Below, one piece after another: positions 4,201-57,820 of a stretch of DNA of 64,000 bases. The notes under the pieces are model-generated. The model was given only the letters and a program-made list of their open reading frames with translations, was not told where the DNA came from and ran no database searches. The stretch covers positions 124,001-188,000 of IMG/VR virus record IMGVR_UViG_3300020202_000061; one strand, written 5' to 3'. Every line of letters begins with the position of its first letter. The stretch's first letter is position 1. The position numbers were made by a program, and so were the translations under genes.

Positions 4201-4211
4201 AGTGCAACCCC

Positions 4212-4240
4212 TTGACATTCTCAAGGGTTTGCCTTAAATA
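4212..4240 (+). promoter_or_regulatory. Hybrid promoter TTGACA-N17-TAAATA for tmRNA
   Basis: Exact spacing; same design at 54045-54073 (tRNA cluster) and 5628-5656. Confidence 0.7.
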
Positions 4241-4246
4241 GGTCTT

Positions 4247-4515
4247 GTGACGTTGAAGCGTTGAAGAACGCTACTCTGGACCTGGGGGCGGTACCCAGCG
4301 GCTCCACCAAAATGCCCTCGGGCGCTATGGGGCCGAAACAGGATCGACAGGTAGTCAGTAGGCACGTGGAGTCATCCGGCGGAAGCTCGGTTAACGCAAC
4401 ACAAACAGTAATTGCCAACGATAACTTCGTTGCGGACGAGGGTTTCCGTATGGCCGCCTAAGGCGGTCCTCGGTAATCCAAATCCATCGCCCGGTGGGCG
4501 GGAAACAGAAACACC
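4247..4515 (+). ncRNA. ssrA: Circularly permuted two-piece tmRNA (alphaproteobacterial type); tag ANDNFVADEGFRMAA
   Basis: Acceptor piece first: T-arm CTGGG-GGCGGTA-CCCAG then CGGCTCC-A-CCA (ends 4309); 19-nt spacer; coding piece starts GGGGCCGAAACAGGATCGAC (4329). GGGGCCG/CGGCTCC gives the G3:U70 Ala determinant; tag 4414-4461; 3' GGAAACAGAA motif. Outer ends approximate. Confidence 0.93.
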
Positions 4516-4545
4516 AGAGAGCCGCCTTCGGGCGGCTCTCTTTTT
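4516..4545 (+). terminator. Intrinsic terminator of tmRNA
   Basis: AGAGAGCCGCC-TTCG-GGCGGCTCTCT followed by TTTT. Confidence 0.9.
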
Positions 4546-4561
4546 GTGTGGGATTACGGAA

Positions 4562-9336: not shown

Positions 9337-9426
9337 GGGCGTGTGGTGTAATGGCAGCACAGCGGTCTTATAAGCCGTTCGTTCCGGACTGGAGCATAGA
9401 GACGGGTTCGATTCCCTCCACGCCTA
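9337..9426 (+). tRNA. tRNA-Ile(UAU) with long variable arm
   Basis: Acceptor GGGCGTG/CACGCCT, A73; anticodon loop CTTATAA; V-arm GTTCCG-GAC-TGGAGC; T-loop TTCGATT with bulged T-stem; CCA not encoded (CCG). Confidence 0.8.
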
Positions 9427-9430
9427 CCGA

Positions 9431-52259: not shown

Positions 52260-52396
52260 TCCCGACATGTCGGGAATGGTGATGAACGCACGTAGTAATC
52301 GTGTCGGAGGCCCCTAGGGGTCCGCCCTGAATGCCCTCGGTTCATAGCCTTGGGACTAAACTGGGAGTCGGGGTTACGGCCGACACATCGCTACCA
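52260..52396 (+). ncRNA. Unidentified ~140-nt structured RNA
   Basis: TTGACG-N17-TATAAG promoter (52225-52253); stems TCCCGAC/GTCGGGA, TGGTGATG/CATCGCTA, GTGTCGG/CCGACAC, GCCCTGA/TCGGGGT. Confidence 0.55.
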
Positions 52397-52469
52397 AGTT
52401 ATCCACAAGAAATTCTAAAATCGGTCACAAATCCCTTGGCCTTTTTTAGCGAACCGCATATATAGGGAT

Positions 52470-53281
52470 CGGCAGCGTGATGCCGTCAGCACAACCGGGG
52501 TGACCCGGCCAAAGCGGAGAAGGTCCCCACCAACCCCGCGCCTCGCAAGAGGAGCACTCACGCGACAACCCAGGTCTGCCCCAAAAGGGTGCATCGTGAG
52601 AGCGGTGCGAAACAGGACAAGGTGAGGTAGTCAAGCGGCCCTCAAAAGGGGTCGTCAGGTAGAGGTCGCACTCTACCGCTTCCTGCGAAACACCACCTGT
52701 GAGGACTCAAGGGAAGGGGTCGGGTTGACCGTTAGCGCGGGAAGGCTCGATTCCAGTCTGATGGGAGAGGTTCGGCTGTTCAAGGCTCGCCAGAAATGGA
52801 GGGTCACGTAGCCGGGCTAAGCTTCCAGAAAGACCGTTAGTAGGCCCGCAAGGTCGAAAGCAAAGCACGGGTGTATTCTGGCCGGGCAACCGGTTGGATC
52901 ACAGTCAGTGGCTCGTGTTTGGTGGTTCCGGTAGGCAATGGCTTTTGAACGGCCAATCCTATTGATGGAAACGGAAAAGGAAAGACCGCTGACAGCGTGG
53001 GCTGAAAGAGGCCAACGTCCCTCAGGGACACCACCGGGACCCCAAGTCCAGGTGGCATCTAGGGAAAGGGTCTATCGGGATTTTCGCGAGTCCAGGTAGG
53101 TTCAGGAACTGGAGAAGATGCCTACGTTAAGCGCAAATGCCAGCGCTCTATAAATGGGCGGCCTTGCTTGGCTACCAACGAAAGTTGGTGGATGAGGTTC
53201 GAAACCCGGTGTGCTTACCCATCGGGGAATAATGGATCGAAGGCCGAGTATGCCTCACCTTAGTCTAGGGTGGGGCTTTTT
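52470..53281 (+). ncRNA. GOLLD-like giant structured RNA (~810 nt)
   Basis: Size, phage/tRNA context, purine-rich with many GNRA and CAAAAG-capped hairpins; TAGTAGGCCCGCAAGGTCGAAAG and CTACCAAC-GAAA-GTTGGTGGAT..GGGGAATAAT elements resemble GOLLD as I recall it; terminal hairpin plus U-tract. Confidence 0.6.
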
Positions 53282-53319
53282 CTTTTGCAGAACTCTGAAA
53301 ATTCTGATATATCCTGGGG

Positions 53320-54048
53320 ATGTCCGACGAGAATCCCTTCGAGCACCTATCTGACTCGGAATTGATGGACCGTCTTGGTGTGTCCTGGAATTCCGTGCTG
53401 AACCTGCGTGCGCAGATCAAGAAGGCCAAGGAAGCTCTTCCGGCCGCGTCCGAGGAATTGGAACAGCTTGAACGGGAGGCGAGCAAGCGCAAACGCCGCG
53501 ATGAATGGCTGGCGAAGCAGCCCGAGTTCGAACGAGCCCGTCAGGACCCGGAGTGGCAGGCGTGGCGCGTGGCATTCCTAGCGCGGGCTCGGGCGGCCGA
53601 AATCAACACACTGAACCTTCCAACGCCGGGTTTGAATTTCGTCCATGAGGACGTGTCTCTGACAGACCTCAACCTGTTCATGGCTCCGATCCATCCCGAG
53701 GAAGAGTTCGTTCGGTTCGACAATTCCTGGACCATGGCCCAGGTTGTGGTGCACGTCGGTCTATTCCAGAGCCTGACTCAGGCCAGAAAGAACGGTTTCA
53801 ACAAGCCGATTCCCAGTGGTTTCTCCCAGCATGTGATGGGGAAGAAGAAAACCACGGTGTTCATTCTGAACCGCTTACCCAAAGAGCCTAAGCCCACGCG
53901 TAGCATGTCTTGGGTCTACCAGGGTGTCAGCTATACCTACGGAAATGGCTTTTACACCTGCACCTATCCCGATGGTATTTGGTCGGTCTCGTTCAATGGA
54001 GTGCATTTCGTAAATGGAAAAGTTGTGCGTTCGAAAAGAAACTCTTGA
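53320..54048 (+). CDS. Hypothetical protein with possible S4-like RNA-binding motif
   Basis: Coiled-coil N-terminus; MAQVVVHVGLFQSLTQARKNG resembles the S4 motif. Confidence 0.55.
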   Translation: MSDENPFEHLSDSELMDRLGVSWNSVLNLRAQIKKAKEALPAASEELEQLEREASKRKRRDEWLAKQPEFERARQDPEWQAWRVAFLARARAAEINTLNLPTPGLNFVHEDVSLTDLNLFMAPIHPEEEFVRFDNSWTMAQVVVHVGLFQSLTQARKNGFNKPIPSGFSQHVMGKKKTTVFILNRLPKEPKPTRSMSWVYQGVSYTYGNGFYTCTYPDGIWSVSFNGVHFVNGKVVRSKRNS

Positions 54049-54094
54049 CACACCCTGGGGTTTCGACTAAATACGTCCTGATCGCGAGATCAAC

Positions 54095-54207
54095 CCGATC
54101 ATAAGTTAACAAGCCGAGGGTTCGCTGTCCCATGACGATGGGAATGCACCTTAGCTAGACGACCAGCTTTTAACTGGTTAGTATGGGTCCGAGTCCCATT
54201 GGTCGGT
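54095..54207 (+). tRNA. tRNA-Lys(UUU)-like RNA with a ~40-nt hairpin inserted in the D-loop
   Basis: Acceptor CCGATCA/TGGTCGG; ACCAG-CTTTTAA-CTGGT; T-arm ATGGG-TCCGAGT-CCCAT; no CCA. Confidence 0.6.
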
Positions 54208-54210
54208 TAC

Positions 54211-54286
54211 GCCCCTGTAGCTCAGTGAATAGAGCGGCCGGTTTCTACCCGGTAGGTCGGGAGTTTGAATCTCTCCAGGGGTGCCA
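54211..54286 (+). tRNA. tRNA-Arg(UCU)
   Basis: GCCCCTG/CAGGGGT acceptor, loop TTTCTAC, encoded CCA. Confidence 0.9.
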
Positions 54287-54287
54287 A

Positions 54288-54364
54288 CCAGCGGTAGCTC
54301 AGAGACAGTAGAGCGCCGGAGTTAAATCTGGAGGTCGGGGGTTCAATTCCTTCCCGCTGGGCCA
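54288..54364 (+). tRNA. Atypical tRNA with 6-nt anticodon loop (GTTAAA); possibly Asn-derived
   Basis: CCAGCGG/CCGCTGG, G73, CCA; stem CCGGA/TCTGG closes only 6 nt. Confidence 0.65.
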
Positions 54365-54385: not shown

Positions 54386-54424
54386 ATGTTGTTGCGTGAA
54401 GAGGAATCGATGAAGGCTGTGTAA
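54386..54424 (+). CDS. Leader peptide MLLREEESMKAV (GAA-GAG-GAA) of the tRNA-Glu operon
   Basis: AGAGGA RBS 9 nt upstream; 3' end overlaps the antiterminator strand. Confidence 0.7.
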   Translation: MLLREEESMKAV

Positions 54425-54482
54425 TGTGACCAACATTGTTGGTGCACACGCAGCCGCCTGGAGAAATCCCGGCGGCTTTTTT
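54415..54482 (+). promoter_or_regulatory. Transcription attenuator: antiterminator 54415-54455 versus terminator 54452-54482
   Basis: GGCTGTGT pairs with ACGCAGCC around the GTG-ACCAAC/GTTGGT-G-CAC hairpin; terminator AGCCGCC-TGGA-GAAA-TCCC-GGCGGCT-TTTTT shares AGCC. Confidence 0.75.
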
Positions 54483-54490
54483 GTTGCTCT

Positions 54491-54567
54491 GTCCCTGTCG
54501 TCTAGCGGTCAAGGATGCCACCCTCTCAAGGTGGAGATCACGGGTTCGAATCCCGTCAGGGACGCCA
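54491..54567 (+). tRNA. tRNA-Glu(CUC)
   Basis: GTCCCTG/CAGGGAC, CCACC-CTCTCAA-GGTGG, TTCGAAT, CCA. Confidence 0.95.
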
Positions 54568-54581
54568 AGAATACGAACGAT

Positions 54582-54657
54582 GGCTCGTTCATCTAGTGGC
54601 CTAGGATACCGGACTTTCACTCCGGGTACACGGGTTCGACTCCCGTACGAGCTACCA
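54582..54657 (+). tRNA. tRNA-Glu(UUC)
   Basis: GGCTCGT/ACGAGCT, CCGGA-CTTTCAC-TCCGG, TTCGACT, CCA. Confidence 0.92.
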
Positions 54658-54659
54658 GA

Positions 54660-54734
54660 CGCCCATTCGTCTACTGCCTAGGACACTGGCCTTTCAAGCC
54701 AGGGGAAGGGGATGGATACCCCTATGGGCGACCA
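54660..54734 (+). tRNA. tRNA-Glu(UUC) with non-canonical T-loop
   Basis: CGCCCAT/ATGGGCG, CTGGC-CTTTCAA-GCCAG, T-loop ATGGATA, CCA. Confidence 0.85.
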
Positions 54735-54760
54735 GTTTCAGTTCCCGAACGGTAGTAGGG

Positions 54761-54837
54761 TGCTGGGGTGAAGCGGGGTTCGAGTCCCCAAGCGGATCGG
54801 TTCGACTCCGACTCGCGCAGGTGCAATATCCCCAGCG
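54761..54837 (+). ncRNA. tRNA-like element with two T-loop hairpins
   Basis: GCTGGGG/CCCCAGC closing stem; GGGG-TTCGAGT-CCCC and TCGG-TTCGACT-CCGA. Confidence 0.5.
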
Positions 54838-54841
54838 TTTT

Positions 54842-54922
54842 CCCCCGTGGGATTGCGGTTGGTGTGATCGCCGGTTTCTCAAATCGGAGCACAGATGGGT
54901 TCGACGCCCATACGGGGGACCA
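54842..54922 (+). tRNA. tRNA-Glu(CUC), divergent
   Basis: CCCCCGT/ACGGGGG, D-stem GATT/GATC, CCGGT-TTCTCAA-ATCGG, ATGGG-TTCGACG-CCCAT, CCA. Confidence 0.8.
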
Positions 54923-56608: not shown

Positions 56609-57820
56609 ATGGCGAAGTTTGAAGTGCCCGTGGTTCGCGTTCGTGCGGTCGAGAAGCATCCGAACGCTGATCGACTCGATATCGTCCGTATCGGCGACTA
56701 CAACTGCATCAGCAACAAGAAAGAGGACGGCACGTCCAGGTATGCGCCGGGCGATCTCGTCGTCTACGTCCCGGAGGGTGCCATCGTTCCAGAGTGGTTG
56801 CTCCGCATGGGCTTCTGGAATGAAAAGACCAACATGGGTCTGCTCGCCGGACCTCAGGGCAATCGCGTGAAGGCGGTGACCCTGCGTGGGGTCATCAGCC
56901 AGGGCATTATGTTTCCGGTCAGCACTGGTGACGTGCAGGGCTTTCCCCTGGGTGATCCCAACATGAACGCGCCCTGGATCAGCGTTGAAGAGGGTCAGAA
57001 CCTCGCGACCGATCTCAACATCATCAAGTATGAGCCGGAGATTCCCGATTGCCTCAAAGGTTCGGTTGCGTCCTGCCACGGATGGACTCTCAAGGGCGAT
57101 CTGGAGAACGTCAAGAAGTTCCCCGACATCCTCCAAGAGGGTGAGGAAGTCGTGATGACCGAGAAGGTTCACGGCGTCTACATGCAGATCGGTTATGTAC
57201 CGAATTTGGAGTTCGAGATCGATGCCGACGAGAGCAATGGGCTCTACAAGGATGGCGATTGGTTCGTCACGTCCAAGGGTCTGGCCGAGGTCGGCATGGT
57301 ATTTCAGTTGAACGAGGAGAACGCTGAGAACCTCTACGTGAAGATGTTTCGCAAGATGAAGGAACGTCTGGAGTGGCTCTACAACGACATGTACGAGAAG
57401 TGGCAACAGACTCAGGATCGTTACTACCCGGAGAATCGCCCGTTCTACCTGATCGGTGAACTTTACGGGCCGGGCGTCCAGGACCTCCACTACAGTTTCC
57501 AGCAGGAGTTCGTCGCCCACGACATCTACATGGGTCAGCCCGGCAACGGTTGGTATCTGGATGAGGATCAGTTCGCCTATCATACCGAAAGGGCTCACAT
57601 CGACCGTGCGCCGGTCCTCTATAAGGGTCCGTTCTCGAAGGGGGTGATGCTCCAGCACACGAGTGGGCCAAGCGTCTTGGCTCTCGGAAAGCACATTCGT
57701 GAGGGACTGGTGGTGAAGCCCATGCAGAACCGCCGAGACGACCGGATCGGTCGCGTCATGCTGAAATCGGTCAGCGACGAATACTTGCTCCGTAAGGGAG
57801 ACGCTACGGAGTACGCATGA
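56609..57820 (+). CDS. RNA ligase, DRB0094/Rnl2-like family with N-terminal OB domain
   Basis: HPNADRL, YVPEG, LRG.ISQG, motif I EKVHG, GELYGPGVQ, REGLVVK, LKSVSDEYL. Confidence 0.9.
   Translation: MAKFEVPVVRVRAVEKHPNADRLDIVRIGDYNCISNKKEDGTSRYAPGDLVVYVPEGAIVPEWLLRMGFWNEKTNMGLLAGPQGNRVKAVTLRGVISQGIMFPVSTGDVQGFPLGDPNMNAPWISVEEGQNLATDLNIIKYEPEIPDCLKGSVASCHGWTLKGDLENVKKFPDILQEGEEVVMTEKVHGVYMQIGYVPNLEFEIDADESNGLYKDGDWFVTSKGLAEVGMVFQLNEENAENLYVKMFRKMKERLEWLYNDMYEKWQQTQDRYYPENRPFYLIGELYGPGVQDLHYSFQQEFVAHDIYMGQPGNGWYLDEDQFAYHTERAHIDRAPVLYKGPFSKGVMLQHTSGPSVLALGKHIREGLVVKPMQNRRDDRIGRVMLKSVSDEYLLRKGDATEYA

What the first reader, a model, noticed from the sequence alone, without database searches (positions are those of the whole stretch)
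54095..54207. tRNA-Lys(UUU)-like RNA with a long hairpin grafted into the D-loop
Seen: intact 7-bp acceptor, anticodon arm and T-arm, but the D-loop is replaced by a ~45-nt stem-loop (AGCCGAGG..TCCCAT-GACG-ATGGGA..CCTTAGCT); no CCA; first gene after the promoter. Established: tRNA-Lys(UUU) is the target of PrrC and PARIS AriB. Inference: a nuclease decoy, or a precursor whose insert is removed and resealed (an RNA ligase gene lies 2.4 kb away).
Basis: partly seen in the sequence, partly recalled or inferred. Interest (0 to 1): 0.7.

Follow-up and report, generated by a model that had tools for sequence, protein, structure and literature searches.

The report
Phage tRNA-like RNA with extra arm
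A giant soil phage and its relatives carry a conserved tRNA-shaped RNA gene in which a 45-base hairpin sits where the D-loop normally touches the T-loop, a tRNA architecture I found in no database or review I searched, and whose role (mimic, special tRNA or precursor) is still open.

Summary
Window 54095-54207 (+) folds into a 7-bp acceptor stem, a 5-bp anticodon stem with a 7-nt loop, a 4-nt variable loop and a 5-bp T arm. A 45-nt irregular hairpin (54112-54156, GACG loop) stands in place of the D-loop's G18-G19. No CCA is encoded.

It is not a pseudogene. Syntenic homologues exist in related uncultivated jumbo phages (about 350-410 kb where size is known) from at least 8 other samples.
- The tRNA body is 94-96% identical, while flanking genes are 72-85% identical.
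- The hairpin diverges to 64% identity, yet every predicted pair is kept. Four pairs show compensatory double changes, and the GACG loop is invariant.
- One relative (L017) has the same tRNA-like gene without the hairpin. This places the insertion between nt 4 and 5 of a 5-nt D-loop.

The "tRNA-Lys(UUU)" label is lineage-specific. All full-length hairpin-bearing relatives read UUG (Gln), and the hairpin-less one reads UUA.

The gene heads a short operon of odd tRNAs. About 0.8 kb upstream lies a previously unnoticed GOLLD-like RNA. Function is inferred only. I favour a stable extra-arm tRNA mimic or non-standard tRNA of the U34-U35 class. A special decoder, an excisable insert and a GOLLD partner remain open.

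The parts
54045..54073 (+). Promoter-like element TTGACA-N17-TAAATA driving the odd-tRNA operon
   Evidence: Sequence. Both hexamers and the CGAC before TAAATA are invariant in L008, L015 and L017, while the 17-nt spacer differs. Not called by the strict sigma-70 scan.
54080..54091 (+). 5' leader mini-hairpin GATC-GCGA-GATC, upstream of the presumed RNase P site
   Evidence: Sequence. Identical in L008 and L013-L016, replaced by other sequence in L017. Its role is inferred.
54095..54207 (+). The tRNA-like RNA (113 nt) with an extra arm in the D-loop
   Evidence: MFE fold, z = -3.2. Covariance model R1 finds one copy in the 347.5-kb genome at 120 bits, and homologues at 127-143 bits in L008 and L014. 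In the alignment, 95.9% of cells are paired, against 20-50% when partners are slid.
54095..54101 (+). Acceptor stem, 5' strand. It pairs with 54200-54206; discriminator is T54207
   Evidence: U5-G68 here becomes C-G in L008 and L014, and U-A in run X12. The L014 type (and, from the run-X12 fragments, apparently X12 too) gains an A after the 5' strand together with a T before the 3' strand, giving an 8th pair.
54102..54111 (+). Linker and D-arm 5' part: TAA-GTT-AACA. GTT can pair with GAC of 54158-54160 as a 3-bp D stem
   Evidence: GTTAA is invariant in all four variants. The D-stem pairing is inferred (no variation to test it). L017 has GTCT/AGAC with the loop AATCA.
54112..54156 (+). Inserted irregular hairpin (extra arm): 8-bp lower helix with one C-A mismatch, 2-bp GC clamp, internal loop, 6-bp apical stem, GACG tetraloop at 54134-54137
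   Evidence: RNAalifold on four variants gives 12 consensus pairs, none broken, 4 with both sides changed. GACG is invariant. The hairpin sequence is unique in the genome. It is absent from the L017 homologue, aligned by the model as a 43-nt deletion.
54162..54178 (+). Anticodon arm ACCAG-CTTTTAA-CTGGT. Anticodon at 54169-54171; position 54171 is T here and G in relatives
   Evidence: The stem is invariant. The only change in the arm is anticodon position 36.
54183..54199 (+). T arm ATGGG-TCCGAGT-CCCAT, with C instead of U at position 55
   Evidence: The loop is TCCGAAT in the L014 type. T-loops with C55 also occur in otherwise normal phage tRNAs.
54211..54286 (+). tRNA-Arg(UCU), second gene of the operon, CCA encoded
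   Evidence: ARAGORN and Rfam, 62 bits. In relatives an unrelated tRNA-Arg(UCU) sequence sits here.
54288..54364 (+). tRNA with a 6-nt anticodon loop (GTTAAA), third gene, CCA encoded
   Evidence: ARAGORN 'tRNA-???', Rfam 45 bits. It is 98.7% identical in L008. The only change is in the loop, GTCAAA.
54386..54424 (+). 12-codon ORF MLLREEESMKAV with a GAGGA Shine-Dalgarno, just before the terminator and the tRNA-Glu genes
   Evidence: Conserved in 5 lineages, with synonymous Leu codon changes TTG/CTG/CTA.
54453..54482 (+). Intrinsic-terminator-like hairpin GCCGCC...GGCGGC followed by T6, closing the three-gene operon
   Evidence: Sequence. Conserved with one compensated change. Missed by the scan tool, probably because of the internal mismatch (my reading).
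52862..53271 (+). GOLLD-like large structured RNA (conserved 3' domain), 0.8 kb upstream, in a 994-nt ORF-free gap
   Evidence: Rfam RF02032, 76.7 bits, E = 8e-20, full model length, below the curated 150 bits. Found at the same place in L008, L014, L015 and L017. ORF-free gap shown.
53320..54048 (+). 242-aa protein of unknown function between GOLLD and the operon, syntenic in all lineages
   Evidence: Homologues of 70-84% identity occur only in this phage lineage. No Pfam family. A weak lead to an S4 / TyrRS-C-like RNA-binding domain. The AF2 model is poor.
56609..57820 (+). RNA ligase (N-terminal OB fold plus nucleotidyltransferase)
   Evidence: Pfam PF21189 + PF09414; PHROG 'RNA ligase'. 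Syntenic in L008, L015, L017 and L029.

Best explanation
This is a real, selectively maintained gene for a tRNA-shaped RNA. It is not a broken tRNA-Lys.

It is transcribed from a conserved promoter-like element as the first of three unusual tRNA genes. It is presumably released by RNase P at its 5' end and by RNase P cleavage at the neighbouring tRNA-Arg, 3 nt behind its discriminator.

Its body is a tRNA with a minimal D arm. A 43-45-nt hairpin with an invariant GACG loop is inserted between nt 4 and 5 of an ancestral 5-nt D-loop. That is the place where G18-G19 would normally contact the T-loop.

My best reading is that the hairpin stays in the mature RNA as an extra arm or handle. The RNA then acts as a non-standard tRNA or tRNA mimic of the U34-U35 anticodon class (UUG in most lineages, UUU here). 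It would engage a tRNA-binding enzyme, most plausibly a host tRNA-targeting nuclease or a dedicated partner protein, rather than serve as a routine decoder.

Shown: the gene, its fold, its conservation and covariation, the insertion site, and the variable anticodon. Inferred: processing, retention of the arm, and the mimic or handle role.
For: Fold and significance.

Homologues: syntenic homologues in independent assemblies and runs from soil, freshwater, groundwater and plastic biofilm.

Conservation: the body is 94-96% identical while flanking genes are 72-85% identical. The hairpin is only 64% identical between types, yet all 12 consensus pairs are kept, 4 with compensatory changes, and GACG is invariant. 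The acceptor stem gains a co-ordinated A/T pair in the L014 type.

Insertion site: the hairpin-less homologue L017 aligns end to end with the model (35.6 bits, E = 8e-8), with the arm as a clean deletion. Its D-loop AATCA equals the flanks of the X12 arm, AATC|A.

Not a routine decoder:
- There is no GG in the D region and no encoded CCA in any lineage, against 51 of 55 tRNAs with CCA.
- C1-G72 and U73 fit neither Gln nor Lys tRNAs (my knowledge).
- The genome already has ordinary tRNA-Gln(UUG) and tRNA-Lys(UUU).
- The only change in the anticodon arm is anticodon position 36, as expected if specificity is being retuned.

Published context: phage tRNAs are proposed to counter host anticodon nucleases (PMC10264068). 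Long D arms serve as protein handles in tRNA-Sec and allo-tRNAs (PMC7609411 and PMC7590224).
Against: There are no expression, end-mapping or aminoacylation data. The two read-laying runs gave DNA-level variants only.

Only three full-length distinct sequences, one partial and one hairpin-less homologue are available, so the statistics are thin. The column-shuffle control reached the observed covariation score in 39 of 500 shuffles.

A cleavable decoy titrates a catalytic nuclease poorly. The anticodon arm does not copy any bacterial tRNA among the first 120 genome hits.

The translation machinery can accept a D-arm-less tRNA (PMC11551756), and the phage encodes a CCA-adding-type enzyme. A decoding role is therefore not excluded. 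Conservation of the hairpin base and loop would fit a recognition signal for excision equally well.
Confidence: 0.4

Rival explanations
1. Specialised decoding tRNA. The full-length RNA receives CCA from the phage or host CCA-adding enzyme, is aminoacylated, and reads CAA/CAG (relatives) or AAA/AAG (this phage). The extra arm stabilises a tRNA that lacks the D/T-loop contact, or marks it for a particular enzyme.
For: All parts needed on the ribosome are present: a 12-bp acceptor/T branch, a 5-bp anticodon stem, and a 7-nt loop with U33 and A37. The phage encodes a PolyA_pol/CCA-type nucleotidyltransferase at genome 225318-225737. E. coli HisRS, EF-Tu and the ribosome accept a D-arm-less tRNA, and in vivo use was limited by tRNA degradation involving PNPase (a pnp mutation enabled it) (PMC11551756). 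The body is conserved as tightly as the neighbouring true tRNAs.
Against: The acceptor-end identity nucleotides fit neither Gln nor Lys (my knowledge). The anticodon changed without any other change. Canonical tRNA-Gln(UUG) and tRNA-Lys(UUU) already exist in the genome. An engineered D-loop insertion in E. coli tRNA-Tyr was not stably expressed (PMC5397188). An arm at the elbow should collide with ribosomal elbow contacts (inference).
Confidence: 0.25
2. Precursor with an excisable insert. The hairpin is an intervening sequence, analogous to bacterial 23S rRNA intervening sequences. A double-strand-specific RNase such as RNase III cuts it out, leaving either a nicked 'split' tRNA or ends (5'-P, 3'-OH) that the nearby RNA ligase reseals into a ~70-nt tRNA with a 5-nt D-loop.
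For: A hairpin-less homologue exists with the same D-loop sequence as the insert flanks. The hairpin-deleted sequences are called as tRNAs by ARAGORN. The 3-bp base and the loop of the hairpin are invariant, as a recognition signal would be. An OB-fold RNA ligase is syntenic in all lineages.
Against: The genome has no tRNA-splicing endonuclease and no RtcB. I saw no bulge-helix-bulge motif, and no group I intron match in Rfam. The ligase is 2.4 kb and at least six genes away, and occurs widely in phages without this RNA. A 16-bp interrupted helix is short for RNase III (my knowledge).
Confidence: 0.15
3. Partner or cargo of the neighbouring GOLLD RNA. The extra arm docks the tRNA-like RNA to the GOLLD assembly, or to the 242-aa protein encoded between them.
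For: A GOLLD-like RNA lies 0.8 kb upstream and is syntenic with the operon in every lineage examined. GOLLD genes are known to sit in tRNA islands, sometimes with tRNAs or pseudo-tRNAs inside them, and GOLLD forms a hollow 14-mer cage proposed to hold tRNAs (PMC6582537).
Against: L017 keeps GOLLD but lacks the arm. No consistent intermolecular pairing was found. The association of GOLLD with tRNA islands is general, so proximity alone is weak.
Confidence: 0.07
4. Functionless remnant: a tRNA gene disabled by an insertion and merely tolerated.
For: It is missed by tRNA finders, has no CCA, and has canonical duplicates of both possible specificities. In the window copy one acceptor pair is weakened to G-U and there is a C-A mismatch in the arm.
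Against: The body is far more conserved than flanking genes. The arm keeps all pairs through 36% sequence divergence, with compensatory changes. It is maintained in all lineages under a conserved promoter-like element.
Confidence: 0.06

Closest known systems
Canonical elongator tRNA (Rfam RF00005), in particular phage-encoded tRNA-Gln(UUG) and tRNA-Lys(UUU)
   Same: It shares the acceptor stem, anticodon arm with a CUUUKAA loop, short variable loop, and T arm with U54/A58/C56. It sits in a tRNA operon with RNase-P-type spacing.
   Different: The D-loop carries a 45-nt helical arm in place of G18-G19. Position 55 is C. No CCA is encoded. The acceptor-end nucleotides are atypical. Rfam and ARAGORN scores are below threshold. 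The anticodon is not conserved among orthologues.
tRNA-Sec and allo-tRNAs (long D stem with a 4-nt D-loop, 8/5 or 9/3 acceptor/T branches)
   Same: An elongated D arm is capped by a 4-nt loop, and the L014-type relatives have an 8-bp acceptor stem. In those families the long D arm is a protein handle (SelA-N, PSTK-C).
   Different: The arm is about 16 bp with internal loops, not 6 bp. There is no long variable arm, no UCA anticodon and no Rfam tRNA-Sec match. The window copy has a 7/5 branch.
Non-canonical tRNA introns of Archaea and red algae (including the D-loop) and bacterial group I tRNA introns
   Same: An extra structured segment interrupts a tRNA gene. Removing it leaves a recognisable tRNA, and an insert-free allele exists.
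   Different: There is no bulge-helix-bulge motif and no splicing endonuclease gene. At 45 nt it is far too short for a group I intron. The host is bacterial and viral.
Bacterial 23S rRNA intervening sequences (extra hairpins excised by RNase III without religation)
   Same: A lineage-variable hairpin is inserted into a conserved structural RNA, present in some relatives and absent in others, with its structure conserved but not its sequence.
   Different: This is known for rRNA only. Here the helix is shorter, and no cleavage has been shown.
Phage tRNAs that evade or counter host tRNA-targeting defences (PrrC, PARIS, retron effectors)
   Same: It is a phage-encoded tRNA-like RNA of a class often attacked (U34-U35 anticodons), with variation focused in the anticodon loop and an RNA ligase nearby.
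   Different: The known cases are ordinary cloverleaf tRNAs with point changes in the anticodon stem-loop. None has an extra arm, and no defence system is identified here.
YrlA / bacterial Y RNA tRNA-like modules, and pseudo-tRNAs embedded in GOLLD loci
   Same: A tRNA-like fold is combined with an extra helix, in a phage or tRNA-island context next to a large ornate RNA.
   Different: YrlA lacks an anticodon arm and needs Ro (no TROVE gene here). The candidate has open acceptor ends and a complete anticodon arm.

Membership tests
tRNA (Rfam RF00005 / ARAGORN cloverleaf) | Scores above the family threshold as a whole | tested here: not met
   Rfam gives 21.2 bits against a cut-off of 29, covering model positions 4-67 only. 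ARAGORN makes no call, with or without the intron option.
tRNA (Rfam RF00005 / ARAGORN cloverleaf) | 7-bp acceptor stem plus 5-bp T stem, 5-bp anticodon stem, 7-nt loop with U33 and a purine at 37 | tested here: met
   Helices 1, 3 and 4 are 100% paired in all variants.
tRNA (Rfam RF00005 / ARAGORN cloverleaf) | D-loop G18-G19 contacting T-loop U55-C56 | tested here: not met
   There is no GG in the D region (AACA + arm + A). The T-loop reads UCCGAGU.
tRNA (Rfam RF00005 / ARAGORN cloverleaf) | 3' CCA end and aminoacylation | not testable with these tools
   CCA is not encoded in any lineage. Addition after transcription and charging need wet-lab assays.
tRNA-Lys(UUU) | UUU anticodon conserved in orthologues | tested here: not met
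   The anticodon is UUG in L008 and L013-L016, and UUA in L017.
Intron-containing tRNA (archaeal type or group I) | Splicing machinery or a self-splicing core | tested here: not met
   PF01974 is absent from the genome. There is no group I match in Rfam at 54095-54207. The insert is 45 nt.
Intron-containing tRNA (archaeal type or group I) | The insert is removed from the mature RNA | not testable with these tools
   No RNA data exist for this phage. The runs found hold DNA-level contigs only.
tRNA-Sec / allo-tRNA | Long variable arm, 13- or 12-bp acceptor/T branch of 8/5, 8/4 or 9/3, UCA or other special anticodon | tested here: not met
   The variable loop is 4 nt. The branch is 7/5 in the window copy (8/5 in the L014 type). 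There is no tRNA-Sec match on the element.
Y RNA-like (YrlA) | Ro/TROVE partner gene and a YrlA model match | tested here: not met
   There is no TROVE gene. The only YrlA hit (18 bits, E = 1.2) lies over the two neighbouring tRNAs, not the element.
Repeated mobile hairpin element (MITE/REP-like) inserted in a tRNA gene | Further copies of the insert in the genome | tested here: not met
   The insert is unique in the 347.5-kb genome; the best other match is 13 nt.
GOLLD RNA (for the neighbour at 52862-53271) | Rfam RF02032 match over the whole conserved 3' domain | tested here: inconclusive
   The match is 76.7 bits, E = 8e-20, over model positions 1-416, but below the curated 150 bits. It is reproduced in four relatives.

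The most novel reading that the evidence does not exclude
The extra arm is a docking handle that ties this tRNA-like RNA to the adjacent GOLLD RNA assembly, or to the 242-aa protein encoded between them. That would make it the first defined cargo or partner of a GOLLD nanocage, and the first natural tRNA with a functional fifth arm at the elbow.
Probability: 0.06. Interest if true: 0.9.

Novelty: new variant of a known kind. Interest (0 to 1): 0.66.

Why it matters
[quoted passage not shown] A review of natural non-canonical tRNAs lists no D-loop arm and no phage example (PMC7609411). An engineered D-loop insertion was unstable in E. coli (PMC5397188).

Here nature has kept such an insertion through substantial divergence, by compensatory evolution. 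It sits in a phage lineage that also carries 6-nt-anticodon-loop tRNAs and a GOLLD RNA next door.

Each of the possible outcomes would be new:
- a tRNA mimic used against host tRNA-targeting defences;
- a decoder with a fifth arm;
- a non-group-I insert that is cut out;
- a GOLLD partner.

The element is small enough (113 nt; operon of about 450 nt) to be tested directly by expression in a laboratory alphaproteobacterium or E. coli. It also shows that standard tRNA finders miss this class.

Tried and rejected
1. Close DNA relatives in the GenBank phage collection: only generic tRNA-level hits.
2. IMG/VR scans with single neighbour proteins and exact DNA motifs: nothing, or chance hits. The T-arm motif scan found only ordinary tRNAs with C55.
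3. The one metagenome-contig scan used a pattern that required CTTTTAA. It therefore found only the window's own contig plus chance hits. In hindsight the relatives have CTTTGAA.
4. My first reconstruction of the X3/X4 variant from read-laying tables was incomplete in 54153-54200. It was replaced by the real contig L013. The 'skips' seen are replaced (divergent) segments, not deletions.
5. Covariance model R1 against CcrColossus, CcrPW, Brevundimonas phage Marchewka, two 485-kb uncultured phages and 80 IMG/VR loci around RNA-ligase homologues: only ordinary tRNAs matched, with the arm deleted. One 131-nt oddity (L046) is a different thing.
6. Own-genome paralogues: none.
7. Exact mimicry of a bacterial tRNA anticodon arm: the first 120 genome hits were all outside tRNA genes.
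8. Alternative genetic code to explain the odd tRNAs: rejected. 95% of the genome lies in ORFs of at least 100 aa under table 11, and reading TAG through does not lengthen the longest ORFs.
9. Function of the 242-aa neighbour: no Pfam or PDB sequence match. The AF2 model has pLDDT 43, so no fold search was made. The S4-like lead scored only 0.77-0.83.
10. Intermolecular pairing between the element and the GOLLD region: nothing consistent between lineages.
11. Relatives of a virus record cannot be drawn by the genome search.
12. No complex prediction was run, because no specific binding claim is made.
Full report
WHERE WE ARE

The window is bases 124001-188000 of a single 347,504-bp contig. The contig comes from a JGI soil metagenome (Ga0196964_10000008). 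It is a jumbo phage with 55 ARAGORN tRNA genes and an alphaproteobacterial-type permuted tmRNA. It uses the standard code: 95% of the genome lies in ORFs of at least 100 aa under table 11.

Its RNA ligase is 35-39% identical to those of Caulobacter phages CcrColossus and CcrPW and of Brevundimonas jumbo phages. An alphaproteobacterial host is therefore likely, by inference.

THE OBSERVATION

Read directly, 54095-54207 has these parts:
- a 7-bp acceptor stem (one G-U pair);
- a 10-nt single-stranded stretch, TAAGTTAACA;
- a 45-nt irregular hairpin (54112-54156) capped by GACG;
- AGACG;
- a 5-bp anticodon stem with the loop CTTTTAA;
- a 4-nt variable loop;
- a 5-bp T stem with the loop TCCGAGT;
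- the acceptor 3' strand and a T discriminator.

The next tRNA starts 3 nt later, so no CCA is encoded. By contrast, 51 of 55 tRNAs of this genome encode CCA.

The unconstrained MFE fold reproduces this architecture: -40.1 kcal/mol, z = -3.2, 0 of 200 shuffles as stable. ARAGORN and Rfam do not call it. Rfam aligns only the 3' two-thirds, at 21 bits. The insert is unique in the genome, and a covariance model finds no paralogue.

RELATIVES

Public phage and IMG/VR collections hold no close relative.

Laying contigs of public runs on the region showed diverged copies in freshwater, plastic-biofilm and groundwater metagenomes.

I then went through the downstream 117-aa protein, its 90% cluster, and exact-protein look-ups. 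This retrieved syntenic loci:
- L008, from a 409-kb JGI contig;
- L014, L015 and L016, from ENA assemblies;
- L013, from a Logan assembly;
- L017, a more divergent locus.

All share the same layout:
- the promoter-like TTGACA-N17-TAAATA, with invariant hexamers and a variable spacer;
- the element;
- a tRNA-Arg(UCU);
- a tRNA with a 6-nt anticodon loop;
- a 12-codon ORF;
- a terminator;
- tRNA-Glu genes;
- further downstream, the RNA ligase.

WHAT THE COMPARISON SHOWS

(a) Conservation of the body. The 3' body (anticodon arm, T arm, acceptor 3' strand) is 94-96% identical between lineages. Their flanking protein genes are 72-85% identical at the DNA level.

(b) Two types of arm. The arm comes in two sequence types, 64% identical to each other. 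With a partial third variant from run X12, RNAalifold predicts 12 pairs. None is broken in any sequence, and four have changes on both sides: U-A/C-G at the loop-closing pair, C-G/U-A, G-C/A-U, and G-C/A-U/U-A. The GACG loop and the 3-bp base are invariant.

On the full-length alignment, 95.9% of cells pair, against 20-50% when partners are slid. With only three distinct full sequences, the shuffle control is not extreme: 39 of 500 shuffles reach the observed score.

(c) Acceptor stem. The G-U pair of the window copy is C-G in L008 and L014, and U-A in X12. The L014 type (and, from the run-X12 fragments, apparently X12) gains an A after the 5' strand together with a T before the 3' strand. That is an eighth base pair.

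(d) Anticodon. The anticodon is not conserved. It is UUG in all full-length relatives with the arm, and UUU only here.

(e) Hairpin-less homologue. L017 carries, at the same position, a 71-nt tRNA-like gene. It aligns to the model end to end, with the arm as one clean deletion (35.6 bits, E = 8e-8). Its D arm is GTCT-AATCA-AGAC. The pentaloop equals the sequence that flanks the arm in X12 (AATC|A). So the arm is an insertion between nt 4 and 5 of a 5-nt D-loop, in the place of G18-G19. The L017 loop reads AGTTAAA (UUA).

(f) In-silico deletion. Removing the arm turns the relatives into ARAGORN-callable tRNA-Gln(UUG). The window copy is called tRNA-Lys(UUU) only if GG is put in the arm's place; simple deletion gives no call.

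The element is therefore a maintained, structured RNA gene, not a decaying pseudogene.

CONTEXT

The three-gene operon is unusual throughout.
- The tRNA-Arg(UCU) is replaced in relatives by an unrelated tRNA-Arg(UCU).
- The third gene is a CCA-bearing tRNA with a 6-nt anticodon loop. Its only variation between lineages is also in the loop: GTTAAA against GTCAAA.
- The small ORF (54386-54424, MLLREEESMKAV) shows synonymous Leu-codon changes. It sits immediately before a covarying hairpin, a terminator and four tRNA-Glu genes.

A permissive Rfam scan revealed a GOLLD-like RNA at 52862-53271. It scores 76.7 bits, E = 8e-20, over the full model length, but below the curated cut-off. It lies in the only long ORF-free gap nearby, and it is conserved at the same place in L008, L014, L015 and L017.

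GOLLD RNAs are known to sit in phage and prophage tRNA islands, sometimes with tRNAs or pseudo-tRNAs inside them. They form hollow 14-mer cages of unknown function (PMC6582537).

Between GOLLD and the operon lies a lineage-specific 242-aa protein of unknown function.

The genome encodes a CCA-adding-type nucleotidyltransferase. It has no Ro/TROVE, no RtcB and no tRNA-splicing endonuclease.

HOW IT MOST LIKELY WORKS

Shown: the gene, its fold, its selective maintenance, the insertion site, the variable anticodon, and the lack of encoded CCA.

Inferred from tRNA biology:
- The conserved U after the acceptor stem, the AA that opens the D-loop, the A that closes it, the 4-nt variable loop ending in U, and U54/A58 in the T-loop are the nucleotides that build the tRNA core. 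The body should therefore fold into an L shape, with the arm leaving at the elbow.
- RNase P should cut at 54095 and again at the start of tRNA-Arg.

I favour retention of the arm in the mature RNA, with a role as a non-standard tRNA or tRNA mimic that presents a U34-U35 anticodon loop to a tRNA-binding enzyme. My reasons are:
- no elbow contact;
- no CCA in any lineage;
- acceptor-end nucleotides that fit neither Gln nor Lys;
- ordinary tRNA-Gln(UUG) and tRNA-Lys(UUU) elsewhere in the genome;
- change concentrated at anticodon position 36.

Two published ideas bear on this. Phage tRNAs are proposed to counter host anticodon nucleases (PMC10264068). Long D arms serve as protein handles in tRNA-Sec and allo-tRNAs (PMC7609411, PMC7590224). 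My confidence in this package is about 0.4.

RIVALS

- Special decoder, about 0.25. The bacterial translation machinery tolerates a D-arm-less tRNA, and the limiting step is degradation (PMC11551756). The phage also has its own CCA-type enzyme.
- Excisable intervening sequence, with or without resealing by the ligase, about 0.15. It is supported by the hairpin-less allele. It is weakened by the lack of any splicing machinery and by the wide occurrence of this ligase without the RNA.
- GOLLD partner, about 0.07.
- Functionless remnant, about 0.06, which the conservation pattern contradicts.

COMPARISON WITH WHAT IS KNOWN

It works like a tRNA in shape and genomic setting. It fails membership of the tRNA family as operationally defined (Rfam, ARAGORN) and structurally (no G18-G19 to T-loop contact). 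It is not a conserved tRNA-Lys.

It is not tRNA-Sec or an allo-tRNA, an archaeal-type or group I intron-containing tRNA, YrlA, or a repeated hairpin element. The membership table gives the tested features.

An engineered Spinach insertion at the same D-loop site of E. coli tRNA-Tyr was not stably expressed (PMC5397188). That makes the natural, conserved case notable.

I found no description of such an RNA in Rfam 15 or in the papers searched. Absence from a limited library is not proof of novelty.

VERDICT

I rate it a new variant of a known kind: a tRNA-derived RNA with a fifth arm at the elbow, restricted so far to one lineage of uncultivated jumbo phages. Interest is about 0.66.

Noticed in passing
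window 52862-53271 (+), within the ORF-free gap 52314-53307: A GOLLD-like large ornate RNA: Rfam RF02032, 76.7 bits, E = 8e-20, full model length, below the curated 150 bits. It is conserved just upstream of the 240-242-aa gene in L008, L014, L015 and L017. It would be a divergent GOLLD in an alphaproteobacterial-type jumbo phage lineage.
   Followed up: partly
window 54288-54364 (+); also genome 64636-64709 (outside the window): Two tRNAs with 6-nt anticodon loops. The one in the operon encodes CCA and is 98.7% conserved. Its only variation between lineages is inside the loop (GTTAAA here, GTCAAA in all relatives), readable as UAA/CAA (Leu) or UUA/UCA (stop-reading).
   Followed up: partly
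window 54386-54488 (+), then tRNA-Glu genes 54491-54922: A 12-codon ORF, MLLREEESMKAV, with a Shine-Dalgarno and synonymous Leu-codon changes between lineages. It is followed by a covarying hairpin and an intrinsic terminator, directly upstream of four tRNA-Glu genes. Three consecutive Glu codons suggest leader-peptide attenuation of tRNA-Glu genes. I know of no precedent for that.
   Followed up: partly
window 54211-54286 (+) versus L008:3165-3240: The tRNA-Arg(UCU) in the operon is replaced in relatives by an unrelated tRNA-Arg(UCU) sequence. This looks like a cassette-like swap of one isoacceptor between otherwise collinear genomes.
   Followed up: no
window 53320-54048 (+): A lineage-specific 242-aa protein between GOLLD and the operon. 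It has an N-terminal long helix and a central domain (about residues 100-190) that resembles small viral proteins. There is a weak feature-based lead to S4 / TyrRS C-terminal RNA-binding domains (scores 0.77-0.83). The AF2 model was too poor to test this.
   Followed up: partly
window 4208-4552 (+): A phage-encoded permuted (two-piece, alphaproteobacterial-type) tmRNA with the tag ANDNFVADEGFRMAA. It points to an alphaproteobacterial host.
   Followed up: no
window 9337-9428 (+): A 92-nt tRNA-Ile(UAU) with a long variable arm and no encoded CCA. Several other class-I-type tRNAs of this genome (Thr, Arg-CCG, Gln-UUG) also have long variable arms.
   Followed up: no
L017:1462-1550: In the hairpin-less lineage, about 85 nt of unrelated, strongly folding sequence lies between the promoter-like element and the tRNA-like gene. 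It may be another small RNA.
   Followed up: no
L046 (LR745208.1 36273-36403, minus strand): A 131-nt tRNA-like sequence in a 485-kb uncultured phage, with about 55 extra nt and a duplicated D-arm 5' half between the acceptor 5' strand and a normal D arm. ARAGORN does not call it. It is unrelated in sequence to the element studied.
   Followed up: partly
genome 218699-218776 (outside the window): An amber-suppressor-type tRNA(CUA), although the genome shows no sign of stop-codon reassignment.
   Followed up: partly
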